Below, in pieces: positions 16,366 to 50,197 of a stretch of DNA of 64,000 nucleotides. The stretch spans positions 232,140 through 296,139 of the forward strand of contig CDRNVI010000008.1 in assembly GCA_977017575.1 (NCBI GenBank), read 5' to 3'. Both the position numbers and the translations under genes were made by a program. Position 1 is the first letter of the stretch, and every line of letters begins with the position of its first letter. The notes under the pieces were generated by a model. The model did no database searches, had not been told where the DNA came from, and saw nothing but the letters and a program-made list of their open reading frames with translations. The stretch comes from Paramoeba atlantica (lineage: Eukaryota; Protista; Discosea).

Positions 16366-16904
16366 CCCTAACGGTTGGCGCTGCAGAGCCCTCCGTGTCT
16401 TCTTCTTTTTCTTCTTCTTCATCTTCTTCTTCTTCTTCTTCTTCTTCTTCTTCCGCAAGGAATACATAGATGCATTCCTTGGCAATGTTGTGCCACATGT
16501 TTGGTCATAGCCTCTTTTTCAAGAGGTGTTTCGGAACACCTGGTATGTGTTTTCCGTTTCAAGGACGTTTTCTGTCCAAAGAAAAGCTGTCCAAAAAAAG
16601 CTTCTGCGGGTTTTGTTCGAAAAAAGTTTTTTTCAAAAAAAGTTCGTGCGGTATCCCCCCCCCACTAGACCCCCTCCATGGACGCCCCCCATGGACCCCC
16701 CATTTTTTTCATTTTTTTTTTAAATTTTGGCCCTTTTTGATCTTTTGCACAAAGTTGAGCTTCGGGATTCGGAAGGTCACTTTCGAGAAGAATAACTCAC
16801 CAATTGTAATAAGTTGATCGTCGTTCGTTCGCTTTTTGTACCTTTTTATGCACTCTTCTTGAGCTTCCGTACTGACTGAAAAATCTTAAAAAGGAAGACG
16901 ATCA
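16366..16904. mobile_element. Left part of a TA-TSD MITE, truncated by the LINE; contains a (TTC)n microsatellite
   Basis: Same left TIR CCCTAACGGTTGGCGCTGCAGAGCCCTC as the intact copy at 50660-51308. Confidence 0.8.
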
Positions 16905-19811
16905 CAACAACACAACAACAAAGACACTGATATTTGAATATCAGTTAAAGGGTCTGTAATTTACACCATAAAATAGAACCCACCTACGTACAAGCTCACT
17001 TGGCTTTTACGCGTAGAAGCATCTTCTACGACCATGACATACATACTTCCTCATTACTTTCTTTGGTAAATAACCCGTTAGGTGCGAATGCGGCTTCCGG
17101 CGCTTTGCTTTCATAACCATTTGACTTCCTTATCTGTTGGCTCTATATTCCTGTTTTTGCCTAGGGCAAAGAGCGAAAAAGCTTAATAAATCCAAACCTT
17201 ATTGACAAAATCAATATCCTATCTCTCTTCTTCATAAAACGTATATTAATACTAATGGCATAGTGTATTTAACGACTTCCCTTAGCATGGTTTTGCTTTC
17301 CTTATTTGCTCAATGAGATCTCCTGGTAGATTTTTGCGTCTTGCTTTCATCCTCTCTAAGCGAGCGTTTTCTCTGAGGGGTTCTTCCCGTAAGTACTGAT
17401 ATGCAAACTGGGATCTCATTCTTGACGCGTGTGTCTTCTGCACTCTTGCGCAGTTTTATGCCAATTTTTTCATTGGTTTTGGTTGATTTCCCCTTCGAAC
17501 GGGTGCGTTTCAATGTTTTTGATGAAGGGGTTCTACTAACAACTTCATTTTGAGAAAGAGCCTCAGATTTTGGAGGATCGGGTGTTTCCTCTTCAGCCCT
17601 CACCTGTGTAAATGCAAAAACTGGCAAAGTCCGTTTTTGTAACGATTTGAACATTTGGTCTGTGTTCAGTGGGGTCATGTTTCGTCTTTTGGAGCAGGAT
17701 TTTTCTTCCAAACCACGGAAAAAAAAGGAGGCGTTTTCGTCAGACTGTTGATAAGCTCTTTTCGCAAGCCAGTCCGATGTGTCATTATGTGGGTTCCCTT
17801 CATGCCCCCTAACCTTGATGATGAACACGCGTCGGTCAGCTTCTAATTGAAAGCAGGCACGATGTATCTTTGATAAGAGGTCCGAATTTTCAAATTGGTG
17901 AAACCCGAATAGAGAAAACCTGTTCCGAATCACATGGAAAAATTCCCATACATACGCAGAGCCTGTGTGAATGATAATATCCTTCTCATGCTTCATTGCC
18001 ATCTGCAGAGCCTCATAGACAGCATAAAGTTCCGCAGCTGTTATTGTGAGTGATATTTCTGACGGAGGTTTTAGTCCTACAAGTGTCTTTTCTACCCGAT
18101 TGCCCAATAACACAATACCGCAACCTGATGAAATTCCTGTTTTCGTTGTTCTTAATGCGCCGTCTGTGTATAAATGCAAGGAATCCGTAAGGAAGTGAAA
18201 AGGCACCGCACCTTCTTCTACGAATTGTAATGACGAGTAGACTTTTTGCTTCATTGAATCCTGTTTGGTTTTTTCCCATCTTGGAGATTCTATAGGAAGA
18301 TAATTCGGACGTGGCTCAATGCGCGCCTTTAAACGATCAACATTAGAGCGCCAGCGTGTTCTGTCTTTAGAAATTTGAATAACATCGGGAACAGACAAGC
18401 CTAGATCATCGGAACAAGATTCAGACAGACAGGTTTGCGTCTTTCGTTCCGCCACACTGAAAGGAGAATCGTGTCGAAGAAGATGGCCTATAAGCTGCGC
18501 TCTCTGTATTTTCGCCACCGTGCTAAGCTTTGAATCATTTTGGTACAGAGCTTCTGTTCGAATACCCCTTTTCCCATCCCAAGTACGGCCTACACCACAC
18601 ACCATTCTGCGCATTTTGTTTACCTCAATATCTAATTCCCGGAGCCTATTGGTTGATATATCCCATGTTCCTGAATTATATTGCACTACTGGCATCACAA
18701 GTGTACGGAATACTGTCATACGGCTCGAGATTGGCAAAGGTGATTTCCAGATCGGCCTAAGTTTATGCATCAATGCCCACCCAAGTCTCATTCGTTCGTT
18801 GGGTGCAACATTTCGATCCTCGCTTTCCTGCGTGCTTCCTAGGTAGCGGTATTTGTAAACTCTGGGGATATGCCCTATACCCGGTATTATAAGTTCGCCC
18901 CCGCTATCAGAAACCTTTCCAACAGTCATCCAAGCAGTTTTATTGACCCCCAAGTTAATACTGAGGTTTTCGTTCCGAGCAGCTCGGTAAAGACTCTCTA
19001 ACATGTCAGTGAGTTCTACTTTAGATGAGGCAAATAAGACTATATCATCGGCGTAGTCGATATCCGAGATACGCAAATGTTTCTCACCACGGCTTTTCGA
19101 TCCTGTAGAATATGTTATTAAACCAGACCCTTTAGCATCGAGCGCTTCTGCCAATATCCGATCGAGTACCATGATAAACAGATAGGGTGCGAGAACGTCT
19201 CCTTGCAGAGTACCATTGGGTCATTATGGTAACACCGTAACTCCGCATGAATGCCACGGCCTGGTGTAGACGATAACTGCGACGTAGAGCAAATGCGTCC
19301 GCGGACTTGCATTTCAATGTGTCCACATTTAGGGTGCTCACCACAAACCCCCCTCTCATAGCTTGAATCTTCGGTCTCTGCTCTCGGGCGCCACGCCGAA
19401 AACAGGTTTTGCGCTTCCGATTGCGTCCGTGTAATGATTTTGGGAGTATTCCAACCCTGCCTCCCAGCACATGGACACGTTCATCTCTCGGTGGAAACGG
19501 GAGGAGCCGTCCATTCATCAAGTCGTACTTAACAAGCCAATTAGACCCGCCAAGCGAAGAATGAACAACCCCTTCCCAAAGTGTAATGCGTTTGCGGTAG
19601 GCCATGCGCCAAACAACGGCCACACGTTTTCCAACTCCAAAAACCTTCGACATCTGCAAAAGGGCCTGCTGCCGGAGTTTTCTTACACCACCCCTCTGCT
19701 TTGGTTGCAAAAAGAGGTTGCCCCGACCACACCTGGCCGTTAGGAGTTTGTCACGAACTTCCAACAAACCATCGAACGGTCCGGAGGCCTCCGCCATTTT
19801 GTATCAACGTA
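16905..19811 (-). mobile_element. Non-LTR retrotransposon copy 1 (single-ORF APE-RT-RNase H type, RTE/Ingi-like), internally deleted
   Basis: 5' part (ATG 19797; VSTLNVDTL...GVTIMT) is joined at about 19218 directly to RT motif NGTLQGD, so APE and most of RT are deleted relative to copy 2. The 3' UTR has a stem-loop ACTGATAT-TTGA-ATATCAGT (16926-16945) and a (TTG)n tail. Confidence 0.9.
17310..19172 (-). pseudogene. C-terminal RT, thumb and RNase H part of the LINE ORF
   Basis: IDYADDIVL, YKYRYLGS, FRTLVMPVVQY, KDRTRWRSNV, then RNase H: LYTDGA, AAELYAV, IHTGSAY, KVRGHEGNPHNDTSDWLAK. Confidence 0.9.
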
Positions 19812-22800
19812 TTAATACAAAAAGTGATCTTAATACAAAAAGTGATCTTAATACAAAAAGTGATCTTAATACAAAAGGTGATCTTAATACAAAAAGTGAT
19901 CTTAATACAAAAAGTGATCTTAATACAAAAAGTGATCTTAATACAAAAAGTGATCTTAATACAAAAAGTGATCTTAATACAAAAAGTGATCTTAATACAA
20001 AAAGTGATCTTAATACAAAAAGTGATCTTAATACAAAAAGTGATCTTAATACAAAAAGTGATCTTAATACAAAAAGTGATCTTAATACAAAAAGTGATCT
20101 TAATACAAAAAGTCATCTTAATACAAAAAGTGATCTTAATACCAAAAGTGATCTTAATACAAAAAGTGATCTTAATACAAAAAGTGATCTTAATACAAAA
20201 AGTGATCTTAATACAAAAAGTGATCTTAATACAAAAAGTGATCTTAATACAAAAAGTGGTCTTAATACAAAAAGTGATCTTAATACAAAAAGTGATCTTA
20301 ATACAAAAGGTGATCTTAATACAAAAAGTGATCTTAATACAAAAAGTGATCTTAATACAAAAAGTGATCTTAATACAAAAAGTGATCTTAATACAAAAAG
20401 TGATCTTAATACAAAAAGTGATCTTAATACAAAAAGTGATCTTAATACAAAAAGTGATCTTAATACCAAAAGTGATCTTAATACAAAAAGTGATCTTAAT
20501 ACAAAAAGTGATCTTAATACAAAAAGTGATCTTAATACAAAAAGTGATCTTAATACAAAAAGTGATCTTAATACAAAAAGTGATCTTAATACCAAAAGTG
20601 ATCTTAATACAAAAAGTGATCTTAATACAAAAAGTGATCTTAATACAAAAAGTGATCTTAATACAAAAAGTGATCTTAATACAAAAAGTGATCTTAATAC
20701 AAAAAGTGATCTTAATACAAAAAGTGATCTTAATACAAAAAGTGATCTTAATACAAAAAGTGATCTTAATACAAAAAGTGATCTTAATACAAAAAGTGAT
20801 CTTAATACAAAAAGTGATCTTAATACCAAAAGAGATCTTAATACAAAAAGTGATCTTAATACAAAAAGTGATCTTAATACAAAAAGTGATCTTAATACAA
20901 AAAGTGATCTTAATACAAAAAGTGATCTTAATACAAAAAGTGATCTTAATACAAAAAGTGATCTTAATACAAAAAGTGATCTTAATACAAAAAATGATCT
21001 TAATACAAAAAGTGATCTTAATACAAAAAGTGATCTTAATACAAAAAGTGATCTTAATACAAAAAGTGGTCTTAATACAAAAAGTGATCTTAATACAAAA
21101 AGTGATCTTAATACAAAAAGTGATCTTAATACAAAAAGTGATCTTAATACAAAAAGTGATCTTAATACAAAAAGTGATCTTAATACAAAAAGTGATCTTA
21201 ATACAAAAAGTGATCTTAATACAAAAAGTGATCTTAATACAAAAAGTGATCTTAATACAAAAAGTGATCTTAATACAAAAAGTGATCTTAATACAAAAAG
21301 TGATCTTAATACAAAAAGTGATCTTAATACCAAAAGTGATCTTAATACAAAAAGTGATCTTAATACAAAAAGTGATCTTAATACAAAAAGTGATCTTAAT
21401 ACAAAAAGTGTTCTTAATACTAAAAGTGATCTTAATACAAAAAGTGATCTTAATACAAAAAGTGATCTTAATACAAAAAGTGATCTTAATACAAAAAGTG
21501 ATCTTAATACAAAAAGTGATCTTAATACAAAAAGTGATCTTAATACAAAAAGTGATCTTAATACAAAAAGTGATCTTAATACAAAGGGTGATCTTAATAC
21601 AAAAAGTGATCTTAATACAAAAAGTGATCTTAATACAAAAAGTGATCTTAATACCAAAAGTGATCTTAATACAAAAAGTGATCTTAATACAAAAAGTGAT
21701 CTTAATACAAAAAGTGATCTTAATACAAAAAGTGATCTTAATACAAAAAGTGATCTTAATACAAAAAGTGATCTTAATACAAAAAGTGGTCTTAATACAA
21801 AAAGTGATCTTAATACAAAAAGTGATCTTAATACAAAAAGTCATCTTAATACAAAAAGTGATCTTAATACAAAAAGTGATCTTAATACAAAAAGTGATCT
21901 TAATACAAAAAGTGATCTTAATACAAAAAGTCATCTTAATACAAAAAGTGATCTTAATACCAAAAGTGATCTTAATACAAAAAGTGATCTTAATACAAAA
22001 AGTGATCTTAATACAAAAAGTGATCTTAATACAAAAAGTGATCTTAATACAAAAAGTGATCTTAATACAAAAAGTGATCTTAATACAAAAAGTGATCTTA
22101 ATACAAAAAATGATCTTAATACAAAAAGTGATCTTAATACAAAAAGTGATCTTAATACAAAAAGTGATCTTAATACAAAAAGTGGTCTTAATACAAAAAG
22201 TGATCTTAATACAAAAAGTGATCTTAATACAAAAAGTGATCTTAATACAAAAAGTGATCTTAATACAAAAAGTGATCTTAATACAAAAAGTGATCTTAAT
22301 ACAAAAAGTGATCTTAATACAAAAAGTGATCTTAATACAAAAAGTGATCTTAATACAAAAAGTGATCTTAATACAAAAAGTGATCTTAATACAAAAAGTG
22401 ATCTTAATACAAAAAGTGATCTTAATACAAAAAGTGATCTTAATACAAAAAGTGATCTTAATACCAAAAGTGATCTTAATACAAAAAGTGATCTTAATAC
22501 AAAAAGTGATCTTAATACAAAAAGTGTTCTTAATACTAAAAGTGATCTTAATACAAAAAGTGATCTTAATACAAAAAGTGATCTTAATACAAAAAGTGAT
22601 CTTAATACAAAAAGTGATCTTAATACAAAAAGTGATCTTAATACAAAAAGTGATCTTAATACAAAAAGTGATCTTAATACAAAAAGTGATCTTAATACAA
22701 AGGGTGATCTTAATACAAAAAGTGATCTTAATACAAAAAGTGATCTTAATACAAAAAGTGATCTTAATACCAAAAGTGATCTTAATACAAAAAGTGATCT

Positions 22801-25800
22801 TAATACAAAAAGTGATCTTAATACAAAAAGTGATCTTAATACAAAAAGTGATCTTAATACAAAAAGTGATCTTAATACAAAAAGTGATCTTAATACAAAA
22901 AGTGGTCTTAATACAAAAAGTGATCTTAATACAAAAAGTGATCTTAATACAAAAAGTCATCTTAATACAAAAAGTGATCTTAATACAAAAAGTGATCTTA
23001 ATACAAAAAGTGATCTTAATACAAAAAGTGATCTTAATACAAAAAGTGATCTTAATACAAAAAGTCATCTTAATACAAAAAGTGATCTTAATACAAAAAG
23101 TGATCTTAATACAAAAAGTGATCTTAATACAAAAAGTGATCTTAATACAAAAAGTGATCTTAATACAAAAAGTGATCTTAATACCAAAAGTGATCTTAAT
23201 ACAAAAAGTGATCTTAATACAAAAAGTGATCTTAATACAAAAAGTGATCTTAATACAAAAAGTGATCTTAATACAAAAAGTGATCTTAATACAAAAAGTG
23301 ATCTTAATACCAAAAGTGATCTTAATACAAAAAGTGATCTTAATACAAAAAGTGATCTTAATACAAAAAGTGATCTTAATACAAAAAGTGATCTTAATAC
23401 AAAAAGTGATCTTAATACAAAAAGTGATCTTAATACAAAAAGTGATCTTAATACAAAAAGTGATCTTAATACAAAAAGTGATCTTAATACAAAAAGTGAT
23501 CTTAATACAAAAAGTGATCTTAATACCAAAAGAGATCTTAATACAAAAAGTGATCTTAATACAAAAAGTGATCTTAATACAAAAAGTGATCTTAATACAA
23601 AAAGTGATCTTAATACAAAAAGTGATCTTAATACAAAAAGTGATCTTAATACAAAAAGTGATCTTAATACAAAAAGTGATCTTAATACAAAAAGTGATCT
23701 TAATACAAAAAGTGATCTTAATACAAAAAGTGATCTTAATACAAAAAGTGATCTTAATACAAAAAGTGGTCTTAATACAAAAAGTGATCTTAATACAAAA
23801 AGTGATCTTAATACAAAAAGTGATCTTAATACAAAAAGTGATCTTAATACAAAAAGTGATCTTAATACAAAAAGTGATCTTAATACAAAAAGTGATCTTA
23901 ATACAAAAAGTGATCTTAATACAAAAAGTGATCTTAATACAAAAAGTGATCTTAATACAAAAAGTGATCTTAATACAAAAAGTGATCTTAATACAAAAAG
24001 TGATCTTAATACAAAAAGTGATCTTAATACAAAAAGTGATCTTAATACAAAAAGTGATCTTAATACCAAAAGTGATCTTAATACAAAAAGTGATCTTAAT
24101 ACAAAAAGTGATCTTAATACAAAAAGTGATCTTAATACAAAAAGTGTTCTTAATACTAAAAGTGATCTTAATACAAAAAGTGATCTTAATACAAAAAGTG
24201 ATCTTAATACAAAAAGTGATCTTAATACAAAAAGTGATCTTAATACAAAAAGTGATCTTAATACAAAAAGTGATCTTAATACAAAAAGTGATCTTAATAC
24301 AAAAAGTGATCTTAATACAAAAAGTGATCTTAATACAAAAAGTGATCTTAATACAAAAAGTGATCTTAATACAAAAAGTGATCTTAATACAAAAAGTGAT
24401 CTTAATACCAAAAGTGATCTTAATACCAAAAGTGATCTTAATACAAAAAGTGATCTTAATACAAAAAGTGATCTTAATACAAAAAGTGATCTTAATACAA
24501 AAAGTGATCTTAATACAAAAAGTGATCTTAATACAAAAAGTGATCTTAATACAAAAAGTGATCTTAATACAAAAAGTGATCTTAATACAAAAAGTGATCT
24601 TAATACAAAAAGTGATCTTAATACAAAAAGTGATCTTAATACAAAAAGTGATCTTAATACCAAAAGTGATCTTAATACAAAAAGTGATCTTAATACAAAA
24701 AGTGATCTTAATACAAAAAGTGATCTTATTCCAAAAGGTGATCTTAATACAAAAAGTGATCTCAATACAAAAAGTGATCTTAATACAAAAAGTGATCTTA
24801 ATACAAAAAGTGATCTTAATACAAAAAGTGGTCTTAATACAAAAAGTGATCTTAATACAAAAAGTGATCTTAATACAAAAAGTCATCTTAATACAAAAAG
24901 TGATCTTAATACAAAAAGTGATCTTAATACAAAAAGTGATCTTAATACAAAAAGTGATCTTAATACAAAAAGTGATCTTAATACAAAAAGTCATCTTAAT
25001 ACAAAAAGTGATCTTAATACCAAAAGTGATCTTAATACAAAAAGTGATCTTAATACAAAAAGTGATCTTAATACAAAAAGTGATCTTAATACAAAAAGTG
25101 ATCTTAATACAAAAAGTGATCTTAATACCAAAAGTGATCTTAATACAAAAAGTGATCTTAATACAAAAAGTGATCTTAATACAAAAAGTGATCTTAATAC
25201 AAAAAGTGATCTTAATACAAAAAGTGATCTTAATACAAAAAGTGATCTTAATACAAAAAGTGATCTTAATACAAAAAGTGATCTTAATACAAAAAGTGAT
25301 CTTAATACAAAAAGTGATCTTAATACAAAAAGTGATCTTAATACAAAAAGTGATCTTAATACAAAAAGTGATCTTAATACAAAAAGTGATCTTAATACAA
25401 AAAGTGATCTTAATACCAAAAGTGATCTTAATACAAAAAGTGATCTTAATACAAAAAGTGATCTTAATACAAAAAGTGATCTTAATACAAAAAGTGTTCT
25501 TAATACTAAAAGTGATCTTAATACAAAAAGTGATCTTAATACAAAAAGTGATCTTAATACAAAAAGTGATCTTAATACAAAAAGTGATCTTAATACAAAA
25601 AGTGATCTTAATACAAAAAGTGATCTTAATACAAAAAGTGATCTTAATACAAAAAGTGATCTTAATACAAAAAGTGATCTTAATACAAAAAGTGATCTTA
25701 ATACAAAAAGTGATCTTAATACAAAAAGTGATCTTAATACAAAAAGTGATCTTAATACCAAAAGTGATCTTAATACCAAAAGTGATCTTAATACAAAAAG

Positions 25801-37800: not shown

Positions 37801-40800
37801 AAAAGTGATCTTAATACAAAAAGTGATCTTAATACAAAAAGTGATCTTAATACAAAAAGTGATCTTATTCCAAAAGGTGATCTTAATACAAAAAGTGATC
37901 TTAATACAAAAAGTGATCTTAATACAAAAAGTGATCTTAATACAAAAAGTGATCTTAATACAAAAAGTGATCGTAATACAAAAAGTGATCTTAATACAAA
38001 AAGTGATCTTAATACAAAAAGTGATCTTAATACAAAAAGTGATCTTAATACAAAAAGTGATCTTAATACAAAAAGTGATCTTAATACAAAAAGTGATCTT
38101 AATACAAAAAGTGATCTTAATACAAAACGTGATCTTAATACAAAAAGTGATCTTAATACAAAAAGTGATCTTAATACAAAAAGTGATCTTAATACAAAAG
38201 GTGATCTTAATACAAAAAGTGATCTTAATACAAAAAGTGATCTTAATACAAAACGTGATCTTAATACAAAAGGTGATCTTAATACAAAAAGTGATCTTAA
38301 TACAAAAAGTGATCTTAATACAAAAAGTGATCTTAATACAAAAAGTGATCTTAATACAAAAAGTGATCTTAATACAAAAAGTGATCTTAATACAAAAAGT
38401 GATCTTAATACAAAAAGTGATCTTAATACCAAAAGTGATCTTAATGCAAAAAGTGATCTTAATACAAAAAGTGATCTTAATACAAAAAGTGATCTTAATA
38501 CAAAAAGTGATCTTAATACAAAAAGTGATCTTAATACAAAACGTGATCTTAATACAAAAAGTGATCTTAATACAAAAAGTGATCTTAATACAAAAAGTGA
38601 TCTTAATACAAAAAGTGATCTTAATACAAAAAGTGATCTTAATACAAAAAGTGATCTTAATACAAAACGTGATCTTATTACAAAAGGTGATCTTAATGCA
38701 AAAAGTGATCTTAATACAAAAAGTGATCTTAATACAAAAAGTGATCTTAATACAAAAAGTGATCTTAATACAAAAAGTGATCTTAATACAAAAAGTGATC
38801 TTAATACAAAAAGTCATCTTAATACAAAAAGTGATCTTAATACAAAAAGTGATCTTAATACAAAAAGTGATCTTAATAGAAAAAGTGATCTTAATACAAA
38901 AAGTAATCTTAATACAAAAAGTGATCTTAATACAAAACGTGATCTTAATACAAAAAGTGATCTTAATACAAAAAGTGATCTTAATACAAAAAGTGATCTT
39001 AATACAAAAGGTGATCTTAATACAAAAGGTGATCTTAATACAAAAAGTGATCTTAATACAAAAAGTGATCTTAATACAAAAAGTGATCTTAATAGAAAAG
39101 TGATCTTAATACAAAAAGTGATCTTAATACAAAAGTGATCTTAATACAAAAGTGATCTTAATACAAAAAGTGATCTGAATACAAAAAGTGATCTTAATAC
39201 AAAACGTGATCTTAATACAAAAAGTGATCTTAATACAAAAAGTGATCTTAATACAAAAAGTGATCTTAATACAAAAAGTGATCTTAATACAAAAAGTGAT
39301 CTTAATACAAAAAGTGATCTTAATACAAAACGTGATCTTAATACAAAAAGTGATCTTAATACAAAAGGTGATCTTAATACAAAAAGTGATCTTAATACAA
39401 AAGGTGATCTTAATACAAAAGGTGATCTTAATACAAAAAGTGATCTTAATACAAAAAGTGATCTTAATACAAAAAGTGATCTTAATACAAAAAGTGATCT
39501 TAATACAAAAAGTGTTCTTAATACAAAAAGTGATCTTAATACAAAAAGTGATCTTAATACAAAATGTGATCTTAATACAAAAAGTGATCTTAATACAAAA
39601 AGTGATCTTAATACAAAAAGTGATCTTAATACAAAAAGTGATCTTAATACAAAAAGTGATCTTAATACAAAAAGTGATCTTAATACAAAAAGTGATCTTA
39701 ATACAAAAAGTGATCTTAATACAAAAAGTGATCTTAATACAAAAAGTGATCTTAATACAAAAAGTGATCTTAATACAAAAAGTGACCTTAATACAAAAAG
39801 TGATCTTAATACAAAAAGTGATCTTAATACAAAAAGTGATCTTAATACCAAAAGTGATCTTAATACAAAAAGTGATCTTAATACAAAAAGTGATCTTAAT
39901 ACAAAAAGTGATCTTAATACAAAAAGTGATCTTAATACAAAAAGTGATCTTAATACAAAAAGTGGTCTTAATACAAAAAGTGATCTTAATACAAAAAGTG
40001 ATCTTAATACAAAAAGTGATCTTAATACAAAAAGTGGTCTTAATACAAAACGTGATCTTAATACAAAAAGTGATCTTAATACAAAAAGTGATCTCAATAC
40101 AAAAAGTGATCTTAATACAAAAAGTGATCTTAATACAAAAAGTGTTCTTAATACAAAAAGTGATCTTAATACAAAAAGTGATCTTAATACAAAAAGTGAT
40201 CTTAATACAAAAAGTGATCTTAATACAAAAAGTGATCTTAATACAAAAAGTGATCTTAATACAAAAAGTGTTCTTAATACAAAAAGTGATCTTAATACAA
40301 AAAGTGATCTTAATACAAAAAGTGATCTTAATACAAAAAGTGATCTTAATACAAAAAGTGATCTTAATACAAAAAGTGATCTTAATACAAAAAGTGATCT
40401 TAATACCAAAAGTGATCTTAATACAAAAAGTGATCTTAATACAAAAAGTGATCTTAATACAAAAAGTGTTCTTAATGCAAAAAGTGATCTTAATACAAAA
40501 AGTGATCTTAATACAAAAAGTGTTCTTAATACAAAAAGTGATCTTAATACAAAAAGTGATCTTAATACAAAAAGTGATCTTAATACAAAAAGTGATCTTA
40601 ATACAAAAAGTGATCTTAATACCAAAAGTGATCTTAATACAAAAAGTGATCTTAATACCAAAAGTGATCTTAATACCAAAAGTGATCTTAATACAAAAAG
40701 TGATCTTAATACAAAAAGTGATCTTAATACAAAAAGTGATCTTAATACAAAAAGTGATCTTAATACAAAAAGTGATCTTAATACAAAAAGTGATCTTATT

Positions 40801-43800
40801 CCAAAAGGTGATCTTAATACAAAAAGTGATCTTAATACAAAAAGTGATCTTAATACAAAAAGTGATCTTAATACAAAAAGTGATCTTAATACAAAAAGTG
40901 ATCTTAATACAAAAAGTGATCTTAATACAAAAAGTGATCTTAATACCAAAAGTGATCTTAATGCAAAAAGTGATCTTAATACAAAAAGTGATCTTAATAC
41001 AAAAAGTGATCTTAATACAAAAAGTGATCTTAATACAAAAAGTGATCTTAATACAAAAAGTGATCTTAATACAAAAAGTGATCTTAATACAAAAAGTCAT
41101 CTTAATACAAAAAGTGATCTTAATACCAAAAGTGATCTTAATGCAAAAAGTGATCTTAATACAAAAAGTGATCTTAATACAAAAAGTGATCTTAATACAA
41201 AAAGTGATCTTAATACAAAAAGTGATCTTAATACAAAAGGTGATCTTAATACAAAAAGTGATCTTAGTACAAAAAGTGATCTTAATACAATAAGTGATCT
41301 TAATACAAAAAGTGATCTTAATACAAAAAGTGATCTTAATACAAAAAGTGATCTTAGTACCAAAAGTGATCTTAATCGAAAAAGTGATCTGAATACAAAA
41401 AGTGATCTTAATACAAAAAGGTGATCTTAATACAAGAAGTGATCTTAATACAAAAAGTGATCTTAATACAAAAACTGGTCTTAATACAAAAAGTGATCTT
41501 AATACAAAAAGTGATCTTAATACAAAAAGTGATCTTAATACCAAAGGTGATCTTAATACAAAAAGTGATCTTAATACAAACAGTGAGCTTAATACAAAAG
41601 GTGATCTTAATACAAAAAGTGATCTTAATACAAAAAGTGATCCTAATACAAAAAGTGATCTTAATACAAAAGTGATCTTAATACAAAAAGTGATCTTAAT
41701 ACAAAAAGTGATCCTAATACAAAAAGTGATCTGAACACAAAAAGTGATCTTAATACAAAAAGTGATCTTAATACAAAAAGTGATCTTAATACAAAAAGTG
41801 ATCTTAATACAAAAAGTGATCGTAATACAAAAAGTGATCTTAATACAAAAAGTGATCTTAATACAAAAAGTGATCTTAATACAAAAAGTGATCTTCAATA
41901 CAAAAAGTGATCTTAATACAAAAAGTGATCTTAATACAAAAAGTGATCTTAATACAAAAAGTGATCTTAATACAAAACGTGATCTTAATACAAAAAGTGA
42001 TCTTAATACAAAAAGTGATCTTAATACAAAAAGTGATCTTAATACAAAAGGTGATCTTAATACAAAAAGTGATCTTAATACAAAAAGTGATCTTAATACA
42101 AAACGTGATCTTAATACAAAAGGTGATCTTAATACAAAAAGTGATCTTAATACAAAAAGTGATCTTAATACAAAAAGTGATCTTAATACAAAAAGTGATC
42201 TTAATACAAAAAGTGATCTTAATACAAAAAGTGATCTTAATACAAAAAGTGATCTTAATACAAAAAGTGATCTTAATACCAAAAGTGATCTTAAAGCAAA
42301 AAGTGATCTTAATACAAAAAGTGATCTTAATACAAAAAGTGATCTTAATACAAAAAGTGATCTTAATACAAAAAGTGATCTTAATACAAAACGTGATCTT
42401 AATACAAAAAGTGATCTTAATACAAAAAGTGATCTTAATACAAAAAGTGATCTTAATACAAAAAGTGATCTTAATACAAAAGGTGATCTTAATACAAAAA
42501 GTGATCTTAATACAAAAAGTGATCTTAATACAAAAAGTGATCTTAATACAAAAAGTGATCTTAATACAAAAAGTGATCTTAATACAAAAAGTGATCTTAA
42601 TACAAAACGTGATCTTATTACAAAAGGTGATCTTAATACAAAAAGTGATCTTAATACAAAAAGTGATCTTAATACAAAAAGTGATCTTAATACAAAAAGT
42701 GATCTTAATACAAAAAGTGATCTTAATACAAAAAGTCATCTTAATACAAAAAGTGATCTTAATACCAAAAGTGATCTTAATGCAAAAAGTGATCTTAATA
42801 CAAAAAGTGATCTTAATACAAAAAGTGATCTTAATACAAAAAGTGATCTTAATACCAAAAGTGATCTTAATACAAAAAGTGATCTTAATACAAAAAGTGA
42901 TCTTAATACAAAAAGTGATCTTAATACAAAAAGTGATCTTAATACAAAAAGTGATCTTAATACAAAAAGTGGTCTTAATACAAAAAGTGATCTTAATACA
43001 AAAAGTGATCTTAATACAAAAAGTGATCTTAATACAAAAAGTGGTCTTAATACAAAACGTGATCTTAATACAAAAAGTGATCTTAATACAAAAAGTGATC
43101 TCAATACAAAAAGTGATCTTAATACAAAAAGTGATCTTAATACAAAAAGTGTTCTTAATACAAAAAGTGATCTTAATACAAAAAGTGATCTTAATACAAA
43201 AAGTGATCTTAATACAAAAAGTGATCTTAATACAAAAAGTGATCTTAATACAAAAAGTGATCTTAATACAAAAAGTGTTCTTAATACAAAAAGTGATCTT
43301 AATACAAAAAGTGATCTTAATACAAAAAGTGATCTTAATACAAAAAGTGATCTTAATACAAAAAGTGATCTTAATACAAAAAGTGATCTTAATACAAAAA
43401 GTGATCTTAATACCAAAAGTGATCTTAATACAAAAAGTGATCTTAATACAAAAAGTGATCTTAATACAAAAAGTGTTCTTAATGCAAAAAGTGATCTTAA
43501 TACAAAAAGTGATCTTAATACAAAAAGTGTTCTTAATACAAAAAGTGATCTTAATACAAAAAGTGATCTTAATACAAAAAGTGATCTTAATACAAAAAGT
43601 GATCTTAATACAAAAAGTGATCTTAATACCAAAAGTGATCTTAATACAAAAAGTGATCTTAATACAAAAAGTGATCTTAATACCAAAAGTGATCTTAATA
43701 CAAAAAGTGATCTTAATACAAAAAGTGATCTTAATACAAAAAGTGATCTTAATACAAAAAGTGATCTTAATACAAAAAGTGATCTTATTCCAAAAGGTGA

Positions 43801-46800
43801 TCTTAATACAAAAAGTGATCTTAATACAAAAAGTGATCTTAATACAAAAAGTGATCTTAATACAAAAAGTGTTCTTAATACAAAAAGTGATCTTAATACA
43901 AAAAGTGATCTTAATACAAAAAGTGATCTTAATACAAAATGTGATCTTAATACAAAAAGTGATCTTAATACAAAAAGTGATCTTAATACAAAAAGTGATC
44001 TTAATACAAAAAGTGATCTTAATACAAAAAGTGATCTTAATACAAAAAGTGATCTTAATACAAAAAGTGATCTTAATACAAAAAGTGATCTTAATACAAA
44101 AAGTGATCTTAATACAAAAAGTGATCTTAATACAAAAAGTGATCTTAATACAAAAAGTGACCTTAATACAAAAAGTGATCTTAATACAAAAAGTGATCTT
44201 AATACAAAAAGTGATCTTAATACCAAAAGTGATCTTAATACAAAAAGTGATCTTAATACAAAAAGTGATCTTAATACAAAAAGTGATCTTAATACAAAAA
44301 GTGATCTTAATACAAAAAGTGATCTTAATACAAAAAGTGGTCTTAAGACAAAAAGTGATCTTAATACAAAAAGTGATCTTAATACAAAAAGTGATCTTAA
44401 TACAAAAAGTGGTCTTAATACAAAACGTGATCTTAATACAAAAAGTGATCTTAATACAAAAAGTGATCTCAATACAAAAAGTGATCTTAATACAAAAAGT
44501 GATCTTAATACAAAAAGTGTTCTTAATACAAAAAGTGATCTTAATACAAAAAGTGATCTTAATACAAAAAGTGATCTTAATACAAAAAGTGATCTTAATA
44601 CAAAAAGTGATCTTAATACAAAAAGTGATCTTAATACAAAAAGTGATCTTAATACAAAAAGTGTTCTTAATACAAAAAGTGATCTTAATACAAAAAGTGA
44701 TCTTAATACAAAAAGTGATCTTAATACAAAAAGTGATCTTAATACAAAAAGTGATCTTAATACAAAAAGTGATCTTAATACCAAAAGTGATCTTAATACA
44801 AAAAGTGATCTTAATACAAAAAGTGATCTTAATACAAAAAGTGTTCTTAATGCAAAAAGTGATCTTAATACAAAAAGTGTTCTTAATACAAAAAGTGATC
44901 TTAATACAAAAAGTGATCTTAATACAAAAAGTGATCTTAATACAAAAAGTGATCTTAATACAAAAAGTGATCTTAATACCAAAAGTGATCTTAATACAAA
45001 AAGTGATCTTAATACAAAAAGTGATCTTAATACCAAAAGTGATCTTAATACAAAAAGTGATCTTAATACAAAAAGTGATCTTAATACAAAAAGTGATCTT
45101 AATACAAAAAGTGATCTTAATACAAAAAGTGATCTTATTCCAAAAGGTGATCTTAATACAAAAAGTGATCTTAATACAAAAAGTGATCTTAATACAAAAA
45201 GTGATCTTAATACGAAAAGTGATCTTAATACAAAAAGTGATCTTAATACAAAAAGTGATCTTAATACAAAAAGTGATCTTAATACCAAAAGTGATCTTAA
45301 TGCAAAAAGTGATCTTAATACAAAAAGTGATCTTAATACAAAAAGTGATCTTAATACAAAAAGTGATCTTAATACAAAAAGTGATCTTAATACAAAAAGT
45401 GATCTTAATACAAAAAGTGATCTTAATACAAAAAGTCATCTTAATACAAAAAGTGATCTTAATACCAAAAGTGATCTTAATGCAAAAAGTGATCTTAATA
45501 CAAAAAGTGATCTTAATACAAAAAGTGATCTTAATACAAAAAGTGATCTTAATACAAAAAGTGATCTTAATACAAAAGGTGATCTTAATACAAAAAGTGA
45601 TCTTAGTACAAAAAGTGATCTTAATACAATAAGTGATCTTAATACAAAAAGTGATCTTAATACAAAAAGTGATCTTAATACAAAAAGTGATCTTAATACA
45701 AAAAGTGATCTTAATACAAAAAGTGATCTTAATACAAAAAGTGATCTTAATACCAAAAGTGATCTTAATACAAAAAGTGATCTTAATACAAAAAGTGATC
45801 TTAATACAAAAAGTGTTCTTAATGCAAAAAGTGATCTTAATACAAAAAGTGATCTTAATACAAAAAGTGTTCTTAATACAAAAAGTGATCTTAATACAAA
45901 AAGTGATCTTAATACAAAAAGTGATCTTAATACAAAAAGTGATCTTAATACAAAAAGTGATCTTAATACCAAAAGTGATCTTAATACAAAAAGTGATCTT
46001 AATACAAAAAGTGATCTTAATACCAAAAGTGATCTTAATACAAAAAGTGATCTTAATACAAAAAGTGATCTTAATACAAAAAGTGATCTTAATACAAAAA
46101 GTGATCTTAATACAAAAAGTGATCCTAATACAAAAAGTGATCTTATTCCAAAAGGTGATCTTAATACAAAAAGTGATCTTAATACAAAAAGTGATCTTAA
46201 TACAAAAAGTGATCTTAATACAAAAAGTGATCTTAATACAAAAAGTGATCTTAATACAAAAAGTGATCTTAATACAAAAAGTGATCTTAATACAAAAAGT
46301 GATCTTAATACAAAAAGTGATCTTAATACAAAAAGTGATCTTAATACAAAAAGTGATCTTAATACAAAAAGTCATCTTAATACAAAAAGTGATCTTAATA
46401 CCAAAAGTGATCTTAATGCAAAAAGTGATCTTAATACAAAAAGTGATCTTAATACAAAAAGTGATCTTAATACAAAAAGTGATCTTAATACAAAAAGTGA
46501 TCTTAATACAAAAGGTGATCTTAATACAAAAAGTGATCTTAGTACAAAAAGTGATCTTAATACAATAAGTGATCTTAATACAAAAAGTGATCTTAATACA
46601 AAAAGTGATCTTAATACAAAAAGTGATCTTAATACAAAAAGTGATCTTAATACAAAAAGTGATCTTAATACAAAAAGTGATCTTAATACCAAAAGTGATC
46701 TTAATACAAAAAGTGATCTTAATACAAAAAGTGATCTTAATACAAAAAGTGTTCTTAATGCAAAAAGTGATCTTAATACAAAAAGTGATCTTAATACAAA

Positions 46801-49357
46801 AAGTGTTCTTAATACAAAACGTGATCTTAATACAAAAAGGTGATCTTAATACAAGAAGTGATCTTAATACAAAAAGTGATCTTAATACAAAAACTGGTCT
46901 TAATACAAAAAGTGATCTTAATACAAAAAGTGATCTTAATACAAAAAGTGATCTTAATACCAAAGGTGATCTTAATACAAAAAGTGATCTTAATACAAAA
47001 AGTGAGCTTAATACAAAAGGTGATCTTAATACAAAAAGTGATCTTAATACAAAAAGTGATCCTAATACAAAAAGTGATCTTAATACAAAAGTGATCTTAA
47101 TACAAAAAGTGATCTTAATACAAAAAGTGATCCTAATACAAAAAGTGATCTGAACACAAAAAGTGATCTTAATACAAAAAGTGATCTTAATACAAAAAGT
47201 GATCTTAATACAAAAAGTGATCTTAATACAAAAAGTGATCTTATTCCAAAAGGTGATCTTAATACAAAAAGTGATCTTAATACAAAAAGTGATCTTAATA
47301 CAAAAAGTGATCTTAATACAAAAAGTGATCTTAATACAAAAAGTGATCTTAATACAAAAAGTGATCTTAATACAAAAAGTCATCTTAATACAAAAAGTGA
47401 TCTTAATACCAAAAGTGATCTTAATGCAAAAAGTGATCTTAATACAAAAAGTGATCTTAATACAAAAAGTGATCTTAATACAAAAGGTGATCTTAATACA
47501 AAAAGTGATCTTAGTACAAAAAGTGATCTTAATACAATAAGTGATCTTAATACAAAAAGTGATCTTAATCGAAAAAGTGATCTGAATACAAAAAGTGATC
47601 TTAATACAAAAAGGTGATCTTAATACAAGAAGTGATCTTAATACAAAAAGTGATCTTAATACAAAAACTGGTCTTAATACAAAAAGTGATCTTAATACAA
47701 AAAGTGATCTTAATACAAAAAGTGATCTTAATACCAAAGGTGATCTTAATACAAAAAGTGATCTTAATACAAAAAGTGAGCTTAATACAAAAGGTGATCT
47801 TAATACAAAAAGTGATCTTAATACAAAAAGTGATCCTAATACAAAAAGTGATCTTAATACAAAAGTGATCTTAATACAAAAAGTGATCTTAATACAAAAA
47901 GTGATCCTAATACAAAAAGTGATCTGAACACAAAAAGTGATCTTAATACAAAAAGTGATCTTAATACAAAAAGTGATCTTAATACAAAAAGTGATCTTAA
48001 TACAAAAAGTGATCTTATTCCAAAAGGTGATCTTAATACAAAAAGTGATCTTAATACAAAAAGTGATCTTAATACAAAAAGTGATCTTAATACAAAAAGG
48101 GATCTTAATACAAAAAGTGATCGTAATACAAAAAGTGATCTTAATACAAAAAGTGATCTTAATACAAAAAGTGATCTTAATACAAAAAGTGATCTTAATA
48201 CAAAAAGTGATCTTAATACAAAAAGTCATCTTAATACAAAACGTGATCTTAATACAAAAAGTGATCTTAATACAAAAAGTGATCTTAATACAAAAAGTGA
48301 TCTTAATACAAAAGGTGATCTTAATACAAAAAGTGATCTTAATACAAAAAGTGATCTTAATACAAAAAGTGATCTTAATACAAAAAGTGATCTTAATACA
48401 AAACGTGATCTTAATACAAAAAGTGATCTTAATACAAAAAGTGATCTTAATACAAAAAGTGATCTTAATACAAAAAGTGATCTTAATACAAAAGGTGATC
48501 TTAATACAAAAAGTGATCTTAATACAAAAAGTGATCTTAATACAAAAAGTGATCTTAATACAAAAAGTGATCTTAATACAAAAAGTGATCTTAATACAAA
48601 ACGTGATCTTAATACAAAAGGTGATCTTAATACAAAAAGTGATCTTAATACAAAAAGTGATCTTAATACAAAAAGTGATCTTAATACAAAAAGTGATCTT
48701 AATACAAAAAGTGATCTTAATACAAAAAGTGATCTTAATACAAAAAGTGATCTTAATACAAAAAGTGATCTTAATACCAAAAGTGATCTTAATGCAAAAA
48801 GTGATCTTAATACAAAAAGTGATCTTAATACAAAAAGTGATCTTAATACAAAAAGTGATCTTAATACAAAAAGTGATCTTAATACAAAACGTGATCTTAA
48901 TACAAAAAGTGATCTTAATACAAAAAGTGATCTTAATACAAAAAGTGATCTTAATACAAAAAGTGATCTTAATACAAAAGGTGATCTTAATACAAAAAGT
49001 GATCTTAATACAAAAAGTGATCTTAATACAAAAAGTGATCTTAATACAAAAAGTGATCTTAATACAAAAAGTGATCTTAATACAAAACGTGATCTTATTA
49101 CAAAAGGTGATCTTAATACAAAAAGTGATCTTAATACAAAAAGTGATCTTAATACAAAAAGTGATCTTAATACAAAAAGTGATCTTAATACAAAAAGTGA
49201 TCTTAATACAAAAAGTCATCTTAATACAAAAAGTGATCTTAATACCAAAAGTGATCTTAATGCAAAAAGTGATCTTAATACAAAAAGTGATCTTAATACA
49301 AAAAGTGATCTTAATACAAAAAGTGATCTTAATACAAAAAGTGATCTTAATACAAAA
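19812..49357 (+). repeat. 18-bp satellite array, about 1,640 units of TTAATACAAAAAGTGATC
   Basis: Continuous head-to-tail array of 29,546 bp with no spacers or inversions seen, scattered single-base variants and rare 17/19-bp units. Confidence 0.99.
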
Positions 49358-49361
49358 TTCC

Positions 49362-49440
49362 GCCTTCTGTCTTTTTGCCGCGGCGACGACGACTCCCTCG
49401 CGTGGGAAACAGTAAAGCGCCATAGGGAGCATGTTCGGAT
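49362..49440 (+). repeat. Family B module fragment starting at its hairpin apex
   Basis: GCCTTCTGTCTTTTTGCCGCGGCGACGACGAC...TAGGGAGCATGTT matches about 14788-14865. Confidence 0.85.
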
Positions 49441-49471
49441 CCAAAAATCCAAAATCCGAATCATTCCGGAT
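49439..49471 (-). mobile_element. SINE tail-only fragment
   Basis: ATCCAAAAATCCAAAATCCGAATCATTCCGGAT is the reverse complement of the SINE 3' end. Confidence 0.7.
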
Positions 49472-49822
49472 CGCTCAATGTTTCAAATAATTTGCAGAAT
49501 TTTGACCCTTCTTTTCCTTAAAAATCTTTCCTATAGCCATCTGGTGTTTTATGAAGCTTTTTATGCAGCAAATCAGCTTAGAATTTCGAGATCTGTTGAA
49601 TGCCGAAGGAATGAGATCACAAGCTCTCACGACACAAATTTTATACTCCAGGTTATGCAAGACCTGGGTGCTATAATCCGAAATGCTCTGATCATGTTCT
49701 TAAACCCTTGGTAGGATGCACCTTGACAGGTTTTGTTTGTTTTTTTGGTAACGAACTTTATCGCAGGGCATCTTCAGATGCCGTGATTCAGGAGTGGCAT
49801 TCTTTCCTTCCTTTCTGAAAAC

Positions 49823-50197
49823 ATCCAATCCAAATCATTCCGGATTGCTCTGGATGGTCACTGGCAAGCCAGACCCTTCACAGACAGATTTGGAAGTTCC
49901 GAGGCCGACGTCCTCTACCAGTTTCCGCTTGCCCAAGGCGGCACCAACGTGATGTTGCCAACACGCTGCGTCGACGAACTGTACGTCAACACGGCTTACC
50001 CAAGAGGTGTAAGCCGGGTAAGGGAGCTGGTTCCCTGAGGGGAGGGTCCGGGACGGTCCTCCGAGTACTGGACCTATTCGGTTATCAGCCAGCCTCTTAG
50101 AGTGAGGCCGCCGGGAATATTGCGATGAGCGGGTTTGAACTCGCCGTCTGAGCACCATGTGCTTCAAACTTTGAATTCTTGCCACTCCGCCACCTCC
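49823..50197 (-). mobile_element. tRNA-derived SINE, full length (in duplication D2)
   Basis: Near-identical to 15511-15903. Confidence 0.9.

What the first reader, a model, noticed from the sequence alone, without database searches (positions are those of the whole stretch)
19797..49357. A 29.5-kb satellite grown out of the 5' terminus of a LINE: about 1,640 units in one copy, two in the other
Seen: both LINE copies have the same 5' junction (...CCATTTTGTATCAACGTA|TTAATACAAAAAGTGATC...), with the first unit 15 nt from the start ATG. Copy 2 ends after two units (61975-62009); copy 1 continues for about 1,640. The intact 3' end of copy 1 (16905) lacks the 18-mer, which argues against it being just a target repeat. 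The array runs in the direction first-strand cDNA would extend past the RNA 5' end. Inference: the 18-mer is a 5'-terminal monomer of the element, and slippage of RT on a 2-unit RNA end (telomerase-like repeat addition) may have seeded an array later amplified by recombination. This would be an RT-coupled satellite generator. Variable 5' repeats (e.g. mouse L1 monomers) and TE-derived satellites are known, but I know of no described case at this scale.
Basis: partly seen in the sequence, partly recalled or inferred. Interest (0 to 1): 0.9.

Follow-up and report, generated by a model that had tools for sequence, protein, structure and literature searches.

The report
Satellite grown from a LINE's 5' monomer
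A 29.5-kb run of about 1,640 copies of an 18-base unit starts exactly at the front end of a jumping gene (a LINE) whose relatives all carry one to hundreds of the same kind of unit there, so this is a clear case of a satellite growing out of a mobile element.

Summary
An 18-bp array (19812-49357, 1,641.6 copies, 97% matches) abuts the 5' end of a minus-strand RT/RNase H LINE, 14 nt from its ATG. A second copy has the same junction with two units. The LINE's 3' end at 16905 has no 18-mer.

The reading that the 18-mer is a 5'-terminal monomer of the element is strongly supported. I collected 14 LINE 5' ends from 8 subfamilies: the window, a public ENA assembly and one separate run. Twelve carry a clear 17-19-nt unit of the same design directly before the short unique leader and ATG; two have only one degenerate unit-like stretch. 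The unit sequence changes with the subfamily. Counts are 0.7, 1, 1, 2, 2, 2, 2.6, about 8, 15, at least 207 and 1,641. No 3' end carries units, which rejects insertion into an existing satellite.

The array grew mainly at the DNA level. Identical multi-unit variant blocks, up to 55 units, recur inside it, and none do in 200 shuffles. RT slippage as the seed is neither shown nor excluded. The element is not headed by the host spliced leader, although scan notes say other retroelement families of this genome are. This is a new variant of known kinds: LINE 5' monomers and TE-derived satellites. Array length and genome-wide linkage remain unverified.

The parts
19812..49357 (-). Array of about 1,641 units of 18 bp. 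In LINE sense the unit is GATCACTTTTTGTATTAA. The distal end is a partial unit, TTTTGTATTAA, at 49347-49357.
   Evidence: TRF. My own unit parsing gives 1,642 units, 44 variants and 1,256 consensus units. Recurrent variant blocks are seen.
19798..19811 (-). Unique 14-nt leader between the last unit and the ATG (TACGTTGATACAAA in LINE sense).
   Evidence: The same leader is found in L004, L005, L006 and L007.
16905..19797 (-). LINE copy 1. N-terminal ORF 19132-19797, RT(part)/RNase H ORF 17310-19172, 3' UTR and (TTG)n tail ending at 16905. An internal deletion at 19218/19219 removes the endonuclease domain and the N-terminal part of RT.
   Evidence: Pfam, tblastn with the L002 ORFs, self-BLAST and the 3' end comparison.
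61975..62009 (-). Two 18-mer units at the 5' end of LINE copy 2. The distal unit starts at base 2, ATCAC...
54591..61974 (-). LINE copy 2, 96-98% identical to copy 1. It keeps the endonuclease and RT regions but has lost its 3' end near 54530-54590. It is interrupted by two SINEs with target duplications (59466-59843, 60839-61213) and by a minisatellite-bearing insert (55698-58173).
   Evidence: Self-BLAST, tblastn, SINE alignment and Pfam.
49358..49826 (.). Flank distal to the array. It holds a 79-bp piece of a dispersed repeat, a 37-bp SINE-tail fragment and about 350 bp of unique sequence. It does not continue the sequence on the LINE's 3' side, so there is no target-site duplication.
15529..16904 (-). 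3' flank of copy 1. It is a copy of a dispersed repeat holding a 5S rRNA gene (15911-16027) followed by a tRNA-headed SINE (15529-15909). It recurs at 49827-51203, where it runs on uninterrupted.
   Evidence: Self-BLAST, Rfam, the alignment.

Best explanation
The 18-mer is the 5'-terminal monomer of a family of endonuclease/RT/RNase H LINEs of a kinetoplastid-type protist. Each full-length element begins with one or more head-to-tail copies of a 17-19-nt unit. The unit has a G-A-Y-M-A-C start, a T-rich middle and a TATTAA-type end. It is followed at once by a short unique leader of 0-14 nt where it was read, and then the ATG. So the monomers make up nearly the whole 5' UTR and travel with the element through its RNA (shown). 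Retrotransposed copies usually carry 1-15 units. Their distal ends fall mostly on unit base 1-2 or in the T-run. That pattern suggests transcripts that start, or cDNAs that stop, at preferred points within a unit (inferred). In the window, one such short array was expanded in place to about 1,640 units. The expansion came mostly from repeated duplication of multi-unit blocks of 0.5-1 kb, by unequal sister-chromatid exchange or replication slippage, after point variants had arisen. The duplication pattern is shown; the enzymology is inferred. The same kind of expansion happened independently in another subfamily, giving at least 207 units of 19 bp. The family is therefore a recurrent source of satellite-like DNA.
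For: (1) Array and junctions. (2) Family-wide 5' monomers. Unit GATAACAATTTTTATTAA: 15 copies in L001, 2.6 in L002. GACAACGTTTTTTATTAA: about 8 copies at L004:3339-3464. GACCAC/GTACAC-TTTTTGTATTAA: 1, 2, 1 and 0.7 copies in L005, L006, L007 and L004:10001. GTTGATTTCTTCCTATTAA: at least 207 copies in L009. GACCATCTTTTTGTTAA: 2 copies at L011:2856. One unit-like stretch each in L011:4001 and L010:4001, and at least 1.5 units in L012, which comes from a different run. N-terminal protein identity between these subfamilies is only 28-57%, yet unit length and design are kept. (3) 3' ends carry a (TTG)n tail and no units. (4) L005 and L006 are 99.6% identical over 4,773 bp but carry 1 and 2 units, so the copy number changes on the time scale of transposition. 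(5) Block duplication: 119 repeated 20-unit words with at least 4 variants, against 0 in 200 shuffles. Exact repeats reach 55 units with 11 variants, at distances of 0.67-4.3 kb. L009 shows recurring variant blocks as well. (6) Reads-derived contigs of 4 runs give the 18-mer bin 1,200-3,400 times the depth of the LINE 5' bins. They also show further array/flank and LINE 3'/flank junctions.
Against: No target-site duplication brackets array plus LINE in either window copy, so it is not formally shown that the whole array lies inside one insertion. The array length and block pattern rest on one assembly; only short-read-type contigs were available as a check. A few short arrays are not followed by a LINE: L002:728-775, L004 minus strand 7238-7345, L007 minus strand 2837-2854. 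The L002 case looks like an array split by a 434-bp insertion. Nearly all related loci come from one ENA assembly, which shares other repeats with the window at 91-97% identity. It may be the same or a sister organism, so breadth across species is thin. Nothing here measures transcription, so the promoter or initiator role of the unit is inference.
Confidence: 0.7

Rival explanations
1. RT-coupled repeat addition. At the end of first-strand synthesis the LINE's RT reaches an RNA 5' end made of monomers. It slips or jumps back by one or more units, telomerase-like. This adds units at each insertion and can occasionally seed very long arrays, which recombination then reshapes.
For: Unit number differs between near-identical young copies: 1 versus 2 at 99.6% identity, and 15 versus 2.6 (5.3 counting the split part) at 97%. 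Something must replenish units that are lost when transcripts start inside the array. Two independent subfamilies have kb-scale arrays. End-to-end template jumping is a documented property of a non-LTR RT, R2 (Bibillo and Eickbush 2004, as cited in PMC2718515).
Against: The recurrent 25-55-unit variant blocks cannot arise by adding single units copied from a one- or two-unit RNA end. Young copies carry few units (0.7-2) rather than a broad spread. The part of the array nearest the LINE is the most uniform, with 14-17 variant units per 100 against 27-39 distally; the model does not predict this. There is no biochemical or RNA evidence.
Confidence: 0.17
2. Target-site preference: the LINE inserts specifically into a pre-existing 18-bp satellite. 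Telomere-repeat-specific and microsatellite-specific R1-clade LINEs do this, as do rDNA-specific and SL-gene-specific elements.
For: Repeat-specific LINEs exist (my own knowledge: TRAS/SART, Waldo, Mino, Dong, R1/R2, SLACS/CRE). A few short unit arrays lack an attached LINE.
Against: The three 3' ends read in full have no units beside them, and the five further 3' junctions seen in run contigs leave into different flanks with no unit in the 30 letters shown. The proximal junction is fixed to the base in the 12 ends with a clear unit, while the distal end varies. Each LINE subfamily has its own unit sequence, including a 17-mer and a 19-mer, which a shared target cannot explain.
Confidence: 0.03
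3. Spliced-leader relics: the unit is a remnant of the host spliced leader. It would be stacked by repeated rounds of trans-splicing and retrotransposition, as relict leaders are stacked in dinoflagellate retrogenes.
For: Scan notes report that other retroelement families of this genome begin with the host spliced leader. An SL-like copy lies in the window at 54510-54546. The window unit aligns to it at 16 of 20 positions with one gap, p = 0.0065 before correction. Every unit boundary reads T-rich tract plus AAG, the look of a splice acceptor. Stacked relict leaders are documented in dinoflagellates (PMC6050394, seen only as a title and abstract).
Against: Units of the other subfamilies show no significant likeness to the SL-like copy (p = 0.055-0.94). 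Units differ between subfamilies although the host leader is one sequence. None of 12 distal array flanks resembles the leader beyond chance. Young copies do not carry an exact leader.
Confidence: 0.05
4. Assembly artefact: the long array is an over-extended or misjoined collapse of reads from several short arrays.
For: Long uniform arrays are error-prone in assemblies. No spanning read was available. The public runs hold only about half of the sampled words of the region.
Against: The 18-mer is more than 1,000 times deeper than the LINE body in four runs. The array has structured, non-periodic variant blocks and 14 phase shifts, not a featureless repeat. Both of its borders are unique junctions.
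Confidence: 0.05

Closest known systems
Mouse and rat L1 5' UTR monomers (A, Tf, Gf types)
   Same: Tandem units at the extreme 5' end of a LINE. They are carried through the RNA, vary in number between copies, often have a truncated outermost unit, and differ in type between subfamilies.
   Different: L1 monomers are about 200 bp and are followed by a long non-monomeric 5' UTR. Here the unit is 17-19 nt and the units are nearly the whole 5' UTR (0-14 nt to the ATG). Copy number here reaches hundreds to 1,640, against about 1-10 in L1. Promoter activity is shown for L1 and untested here. This comparison rests on my own knowledge.
TE-derived satellites that expand from a TE's internal tandem repeats
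   Same: A short tandem repeat carried inside a mobile element is the seed of a long array. The known cases include the central repeats of DINE-type Helitrons in Drosophila virilis, Ogre 3' UTR repeats giving PisTR-A, and HeT-A or L1 3' regions giving satellites, as tabulated in PMC9659126. The array later evolves by unequal exchange.
   Different: The LINE-derived cases listed in that review stem from 3' UTR or ORF2 regions. There, a 5' UTR source is listed only for a DNA transposon, Atenspm giving ENSAT1. Here the seed is the 5'-terminal monomer of a LINE, the array is still attached to its element at the native junction, and the same thing has happened in two subfamilies.
Repeat-specific LINEs (TRAS/SART in telomeric repeats; Waldo, Mino and Dong in microsatellites; R1/R2; SLACS/CRE in SL genes)
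   Same: A LINE found directly next to a tandem repeat, with a fixed junction.
   Different: Those elements have the target repeat on both sides. Here the repeat is on the 5' side only and changes with the subfamily. Membership was tested and not met.
Spliced-leader-headed retroelements of this same genome, and stacked relict leaders of dinoflagellate retrogenes
   Same: A short sequence fixed at the 5' end of retrocopies that reflects the 5' end of the RNA template. In dinoflagellates it is stacked in tandem.
   Different: The units here are not the host leader. This LINE family appears to make its 5' end in another way than the SL-headed families noted elsewhere in the genome.
Telomerase and rolling-circle reverse transcription (for example bacterial DRT2, PMC11100668)
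   Same: An RT that reiterates a short template would give head-to-tail repeats in the direction seen here.
   Different: There is no evidence here for reiteration by the RT. The block structure points to DNA-level duplication. PMC11100668 was seen only as a title and abstract.

Membership tests
Non-LTR retrotransposon (LINE) with AP-endonuclease, RT and RNase H | Reverse transcriptase domain | tested here: met
   RVT_1 hits in ORFs 58449-58931 (1.5e-15), 58900-59487 (1e-09) and 17310-19172 (weak). Full-length relatives P0012 and L002 ORF2 carry RVT_1.
Non-LTR retrotransposon (LINE) with AP-endonuclease, RT and RNase H | AP-type endonuclease N-terminal to RT | tested here: met
   Exo_endo_phos is on record for relatives P0002, P0004 and P0013. 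Window copy 2 aligns to that part of L002 ORF1 (aa 241-590 at 60860-59851). The direct Pfam scan of window ORF 59629-60549 gave no hit. Copy 1 has this region deleted.
Non-LTR retrotransposon (LINE) with AP-endonuclease, RT and RNase H | RNase H domain C-terminal to RT | tested here: met
   RNase_H at 9.9e-15 in copy 1 and 1.1e-15 in copy 2.
Non-LTR retrotransposon (LINE) with AP-endonuclease, RT and RNase H | Defined 3' end with a simple-repeat tail, no LTRs, different flanks in different copies | tested here: met
   The (TTG)n tail is at 16905, L005:6269 and L006:14073. Other flanks follow an (ACA)n run in the run contigs.
Non-LTR retrotransposon (LINE) with AP-endonuclease, RT and RNase H | Target-site duplication around the insertion | tested here: inconclusive
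   No convincing duplication was found for window copies 1 and 2, L005 or L006.
LINE with 5' monomer array (L1-monomer type organisation) | Tandem units at the 5' terminus, inside the element, with a fixed inner junction | tested here: met
   12 of 14 5' ends carry at least 0.7 of a clear unit with the same inner junction. Two (L010:4001, L011:4001) have only one degenerate unit-like stretch.
LINE with 5' monomer array (L1-monomer type organisation) | Copy number varies between copies; the outermost unit is often partial | tested here: met
   Counts run from 0.7 to 1,641. Distal starts fall at unit base 1-2 in 7 cases and base 6-9 in 5 cases.
LINE with 5' monomer array (L1-monomer type organisation) | Monomer type co-varies with the element subfamily | tested here: met
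   At least six unit sequences of 17, 18 or 19 nt, each tied to one protein subfamily.
LINE with 5' monomer array (L1-monomer type organisation) | Monomers act as the element's promoter or start site | not testable with these tools
   No RNA run was available. The only hint is the preference of distal ends for unit base 1.
TE-derived satellite DNA | Long array whose unit is homologous to a repeat carried inside a TE | tested here: met
   The 29.5-kb array is still joined to the LINE at the native junction. A second array of at least 4 kb is in L009.
TE-derived satellite DNA | Array evolves by DNA-level exchange (recurrent multi-unit variant blocks) | tested here: met
   119 repeated 20-unit words against 0 in 200 shuffles, with blocks up to 55 units.
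TE-derived satellite DNA | Arrays spread in the genome independently of the TE | tested here: inconclusive
   Only short solo arrays were seen. Depth ratios hint at more units than this one array holds. No genome-wide census was possible.
Repeat-specific (target-site-specific) LINE | Target repeat present on both sides of intact insertions | tested here: not met
   The 3' flanks of window copy 1, L005 and L006 lack units. The five other 3' junctions in run contigs go to unrelated flanks, read over 30 letters only.
Spliced-leader-headed retroelement / stacked relict leaders | The 5' end is a copy of the host spliced leader | tested here: not met
   12 distal flanks show no likeness to the SL-like copy at 54510-54546 beyond chance. 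Unit-to-leader likeness is significant only for one unit type, before correction.
Telomerase-like RT repeat addition | Units added by reiterated copying of a short RNA template | not testable with these tools
   This needs biochemistry or marked-element assays. The block structure shows that most growth happened otherwise.

The most novel reading that the evidence does not exclude
This LINE family has a built-in way to regenerate its 5' monomers. Its RT, or the second-strand step, would reiterate the terminal 17-19-nt unit when it reaches the RNA 5' end. Each insertion could then gain units, and rare runaway events would seed satellites. That would make it an RT-coupled satellite generator. 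It would also explain how an element whose whole 5' UTR is a repeat, and whose transcripts seem to start inside that repeat, avoids losing it.
Probability: 0.17. Interest if true: 0.85.

Novelty: new variant of a known kind. Interest (0 to 1): 0.62.

Why it matters
How satellites are born is usually inferred long after the event, from faint likeness between a satellite and a TE. Here the array is still attached, base for base, to the 5' end of its source element. The same family shows every step from 1 unit to more than 1,600, and two subfamilies have made kb-scale arrays independently. That makes the TE-to-satellite transition directly testable. One can measure array-length polymorphism, count units in new insertions, and ask whether the RT contributes. 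It also shows an unusual LINE design: a 5' UTR made almost only of a 17-19-nt repeat, in a trans-splicing protist where, according to scan notes, other retroelements take the host spliced leader as their 5' end. That raises the question of how this family makes and keeps its RNA 5' end.

Tried and rejected
(1) Segmental duplication as the sole reason for the shared junction. The two window copies do share a downstream repeat (15532-16904 and 49827-51203). That repeat runs on uninterrupted in copy 2 and in other genomic copies. The distal flanks do not align. Independent elements elsewhere have the same junction, so the point no longer matters; the relation of the two copies stays open.

(2) Target-site duplications: none found.

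(3) Spliced-leader origin of the unit and SL-headed 5' ends: not supported.

(4) Scan of JGI metagenome contigs for two tandem units: 0 hits. A scan for the conserved start of the ORF gave 120 loci, all chance GC-rich matches with no LINE N-terminus.

(5) Naming the LINE clade. Searches with the N-terminus, ORF1 and the RT region found only unnamed environmental or ENA proteins close by, and only generic names further off. The clade is left unnamed.

(6) Host taxonomy through an Rpb5 gene of L003 in the ESM Atlas: uninformative.

(7) tRNA scan of the window: none called. Rfam found only the two 5S genes and nothing in L001-L003.

(8) A simple higher-order period in the array: the autocorrelation of variant units shows no single period. 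The duplications are irregular blocks.

Full report
OBSERVATION

Tandem Repeats Finder reports one array at 19812-49357: period 18, 1,641.6 copies, 97% matches, unit TTAATACAAAAAGTGATC. The left border reads ...CTCCGCCATTTTGTATCAACGTA|TTAATACAAAAAGTGATC. The CAT of a minus-strand ATG is at 19795-19797, 14 nt from the first unit. The right border ends in a partial unit (...TTAATACAAAA|TTCCGCC) at 49357. The same left junction recurs at 61974/61975, followed by 1.9 units.

The minus-strand ORFs next to both junctions carry RVT_1 and RNase_H domains. tblastn with a full-length relative shows two things:
- Copy 1 (16905-19797) has an internal deletion that removes the endonuclease and the first part of RT.
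- Copy 2 (54591-61974) keeps these regions but has lost its 3' end.

Copy 2 is also interrupted by two SINEs with their own target duplications and by a minisatellite-bearing insert. Neither copy can therefore derive from the other.

THE 3' END

In LINE sense the element ends ...ATATCAGTGTCTTTGTTGTTGTGTTGTTGT. Two 99.6%-identical elements elsewhere end ...GTATCAGTGTCTTTGTTGTTG(TTG)n and then enter unrelated flanks. Contigs of four public runs leave the window at 16912 into at least three different flanks after an (ACA)n run. No unit lies at any 3' end that could be read.

THE 18-MER BELONGS TO THE ELEMENT

The N-terminal ORF has no Pfam family. It does have relatives in a public ENA assembly (ERZ24900291) and in one Logan contig of a different run. 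I fetched their DNA and read what precedes each LINE N-terminus. In LINE sense:

| Unit | Where | Copies |
|---|---|---|
| GATCACTTTTTGTATTAA | window copy 1 | 1,641 |
| GATCACTTTTTGTATTAA | window copy 2 | 2 |
| GACCAC/GTACAC-TTTTTGTATTAA | L005, L006, L007, L004:10001 | 1, 2, 1, 0.7 |
| GATAACAATTTTTATTAA | L001 | 15 |
| GATAACAATTTTTATTAA | L002 | 2.6, plus 2.7 more 434 bp upstream (apparently one array split by an insertion) |
| GACAACGTTTTTTATTAA | L004:3339 | about 8 |
| GTTGATTTCTTCCTATTAA (19 nt) | L009 | at least 207 (fills the whole 4-kb flank that could be fetched) |
| GACCATCTTTTTGTTAA (17 nt) | L011:2856 | 2 |
| one degenerate unit-like stretch | L011:4001 and L010:4001 | about 1 each |
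| 17-19-nt unit | L012 (contig start) | at least 1.5 |

Key points from these 14 ends:
- The subfamilies share only 28-57% N-terminal protein identity, yet the unit keeps its length and design.
- The unit always ends directly at a short unique leader or at the ATG itself.
- The unit sequence changes with the subfamily.
- The inner junction is fixed and the outer end varies. Seven of 13 outer ends start at unit base 1-2 and five at base 6-9.

These facts, together with unit-free 3' ends, reject insertion into a pre-existing satellite. They show that the unit is the element's own 5'-terminal monomer, carried through the RNA.

One caution applies. The ENA assembly shares other repeats with the window at 91-97% identity, so it may be the same or a sister organism. 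The evidence is therefore breadth across LINE subfamilies more than across species.

HOW THE ARRAY GREW

I parsed the array into 1,642 units: 1,256 consensus units and 44 variants. Written as a string of variant symbols, it shows the same multi-unit patterns again and again.
- There are 119 different 20-unit words with at least four variants that occur more than once. None does in 200 shuffles of unit order.
- Exact repeats reach 55 units (990 bp) with 11 variants, at distances of 0.67-4.3 kb.
- There is no single higher-order period.

Such blocks require that point variants arose first and were then copied together. This is DNA-level duplication, by unequal exchange or slippage over hundreds of bases, and not unit-by-unit addition. 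Variant density rises from 14-17 per 100 units next to the LINE to 27-39 distally. The L009 array shows recurring variant blocks too.

Near-identical copies differ in unit number, and R2's RT is known to jump between template ends (cited in PMC2718515). But nothing here demands it.

IS THE ARRAY REAL?

Only Logan contigs of four runs from one study were available. They confirm the LINE, its deletion branch point at 19218 and the junction region. They give the bin with the 18-mers a word depth 1,200-3,400 times that of the LINE 5' bins in all four runs. The tool warns that this is not a copy number. It does fit thousands of units and argues against a gross assembly artefact. No spanning read was seen, so the exact length is unverified.

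SPLICED-LEADER IDEA

Scan notes say this is a kinetoplastid-type genome in which other retroelement families begin with the host spliced leader. A kinetoplastid-type leader copy is indeed in the window at 54510-54546. It matches 17 of 19 positions of a consensus I recalled from memory, against a chance expectation of 0.04 matches. I tested whether the unit is a leader relic.
- The window unit resembles the leader copy (16 of 20 positions, p = 0.0065 uncorrected). The other unit types do not.
- None of 12 outer array flanks resembles the leader beyond chance.

So this family is not leader-headed. Its RNA 5' end seems to lie in the monomers themselves. Every unit boundary reads T-rich tract plus AAG, and outer ends prefer unit base 1. 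Whether that marks an initiator, a splice acceptor or an RT stop cannot be decided here.

SURROUNDINGS

The 3' flank of copy 1 (15529-16904) is a copy of a dispersed repeat with a 5S rRNA gene directly followed by a tRNA-headed SINE. The same repeat at 49827-51203 runs on uninterrupted, as it does in other genomic copies. Copy 1 therefore inserted into that repeat. The expected continuation is not found beyond the array, and no target duplication was found for any copy. The two window copies may or may not be independent insertions.

COMPARISON AND VERDICT

In how it works, this is closest to two known things. One is rodent L1 5' monomers. The other is satellites that expand from a TE's internal tandem repeats; the LINE cases listed in PMC9659126 come from 3' UTR or ORF2 regions, not the 5' end. 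It differs in three ways:
- the tiny unit, which forms nearly the whole 5' UTR;
- the range from 1 to more than 1,600 units within one family;
- the array still joined to its source at the native junction, twice independently.

I rate it a new variant of a known kind.

Noticed in passing
window 15911-16027 (-) and 50205-50321 (-): Two 5S rRNA genes (Rfam 75.6 bits each). Each is followed after 1-2 nt by a full tRNA-headed SINE, inside a dispersed repeat of at least 1.4 kb whose likeness ends exactly at the SINE's 3' end. This looks like a 5S-plus-SINE composite that moves or is duplicated as a unit.
   Followed up: partly
window 54510-54546 (+): A kinetoplastid-type spliced-leader-like copy (...AACGATAAAGATACAGTTTCTGTACCTTGTTG) preceded by an A-rich run. 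It sits exactly where LINE copy 2 loses its 3' end. It is probably the head of an SL-headed retroposon of the kind noted elsewhere in this genome.
   Followed up: partly
window 62120-62339: A 5'-truncated SINE fragment (the last 156 bp, minus strand) whose truncated end abuts a 19-bp tandem repeat (AAGTATAGGAATATTGCAT, 3.2 copies) that is unrelated to the SINE. Another first-stage note read this as RT reiteration.
   Followed up: no
window 4375-4733, 13354-13734, 59466-59843, 60839-61213: Full copies of a roughly 380-bp tRNA-headed SINE with 9-13-bp target duplications and GGATT/T-run tails. Two of them landed inside LINE copy 2. Its tail differs from the LINE's (TTG)n tail, so this LINE is probably not its partner.
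   Followed up: partly
window 55698-58173; also 730-1075 and 2532-3250: An insert in LINE copy 2 that carries a 59-67-bp minisatellite (CACGTG-containing units). The same minisatellite lies in inverted orientation near the window's start.
   Followed up: no
L010 1-229 and 686-887; L002 7262-7303: Another 18-bp tandem repeat (AAGACCTTTGTTTTTTTG in the sense of the L002 copy; 12.7, 11.1 and 2.3 copies). It is not followed by a recognisable LINE N-terminus. In L010 it lies downstream of a minus-strand RT gene.
   Followed up: partly
window 16656-16701 and 50949-50990; L001 483-899: Short runs of a GGGGGGTCCATGG-type 12-13-bp repeat recur in the 5S-bearing repeat of the window and upstream of the LINE in L001.
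   Followed up: no
window 52528-53067 (-) and 1746-2402 (-): An ORF with DUF6570 (a domain found with Helitron-type helicases, 1.2e-06) and an ORF with an HTH_38 domain (3.8e-12; an IS30-like transposase was noted here by another reader). The window is a dense pile of mobile elements.
   Followed up: no
Read-laying output, places 19809 and 19847: Loose ends GCAGTGGTATCAACGCAGA and GGAAGAGC look like library or amplification adapter sequence joined to 18-mer DNA in the public runs. They are not biology.
   Followed up: no
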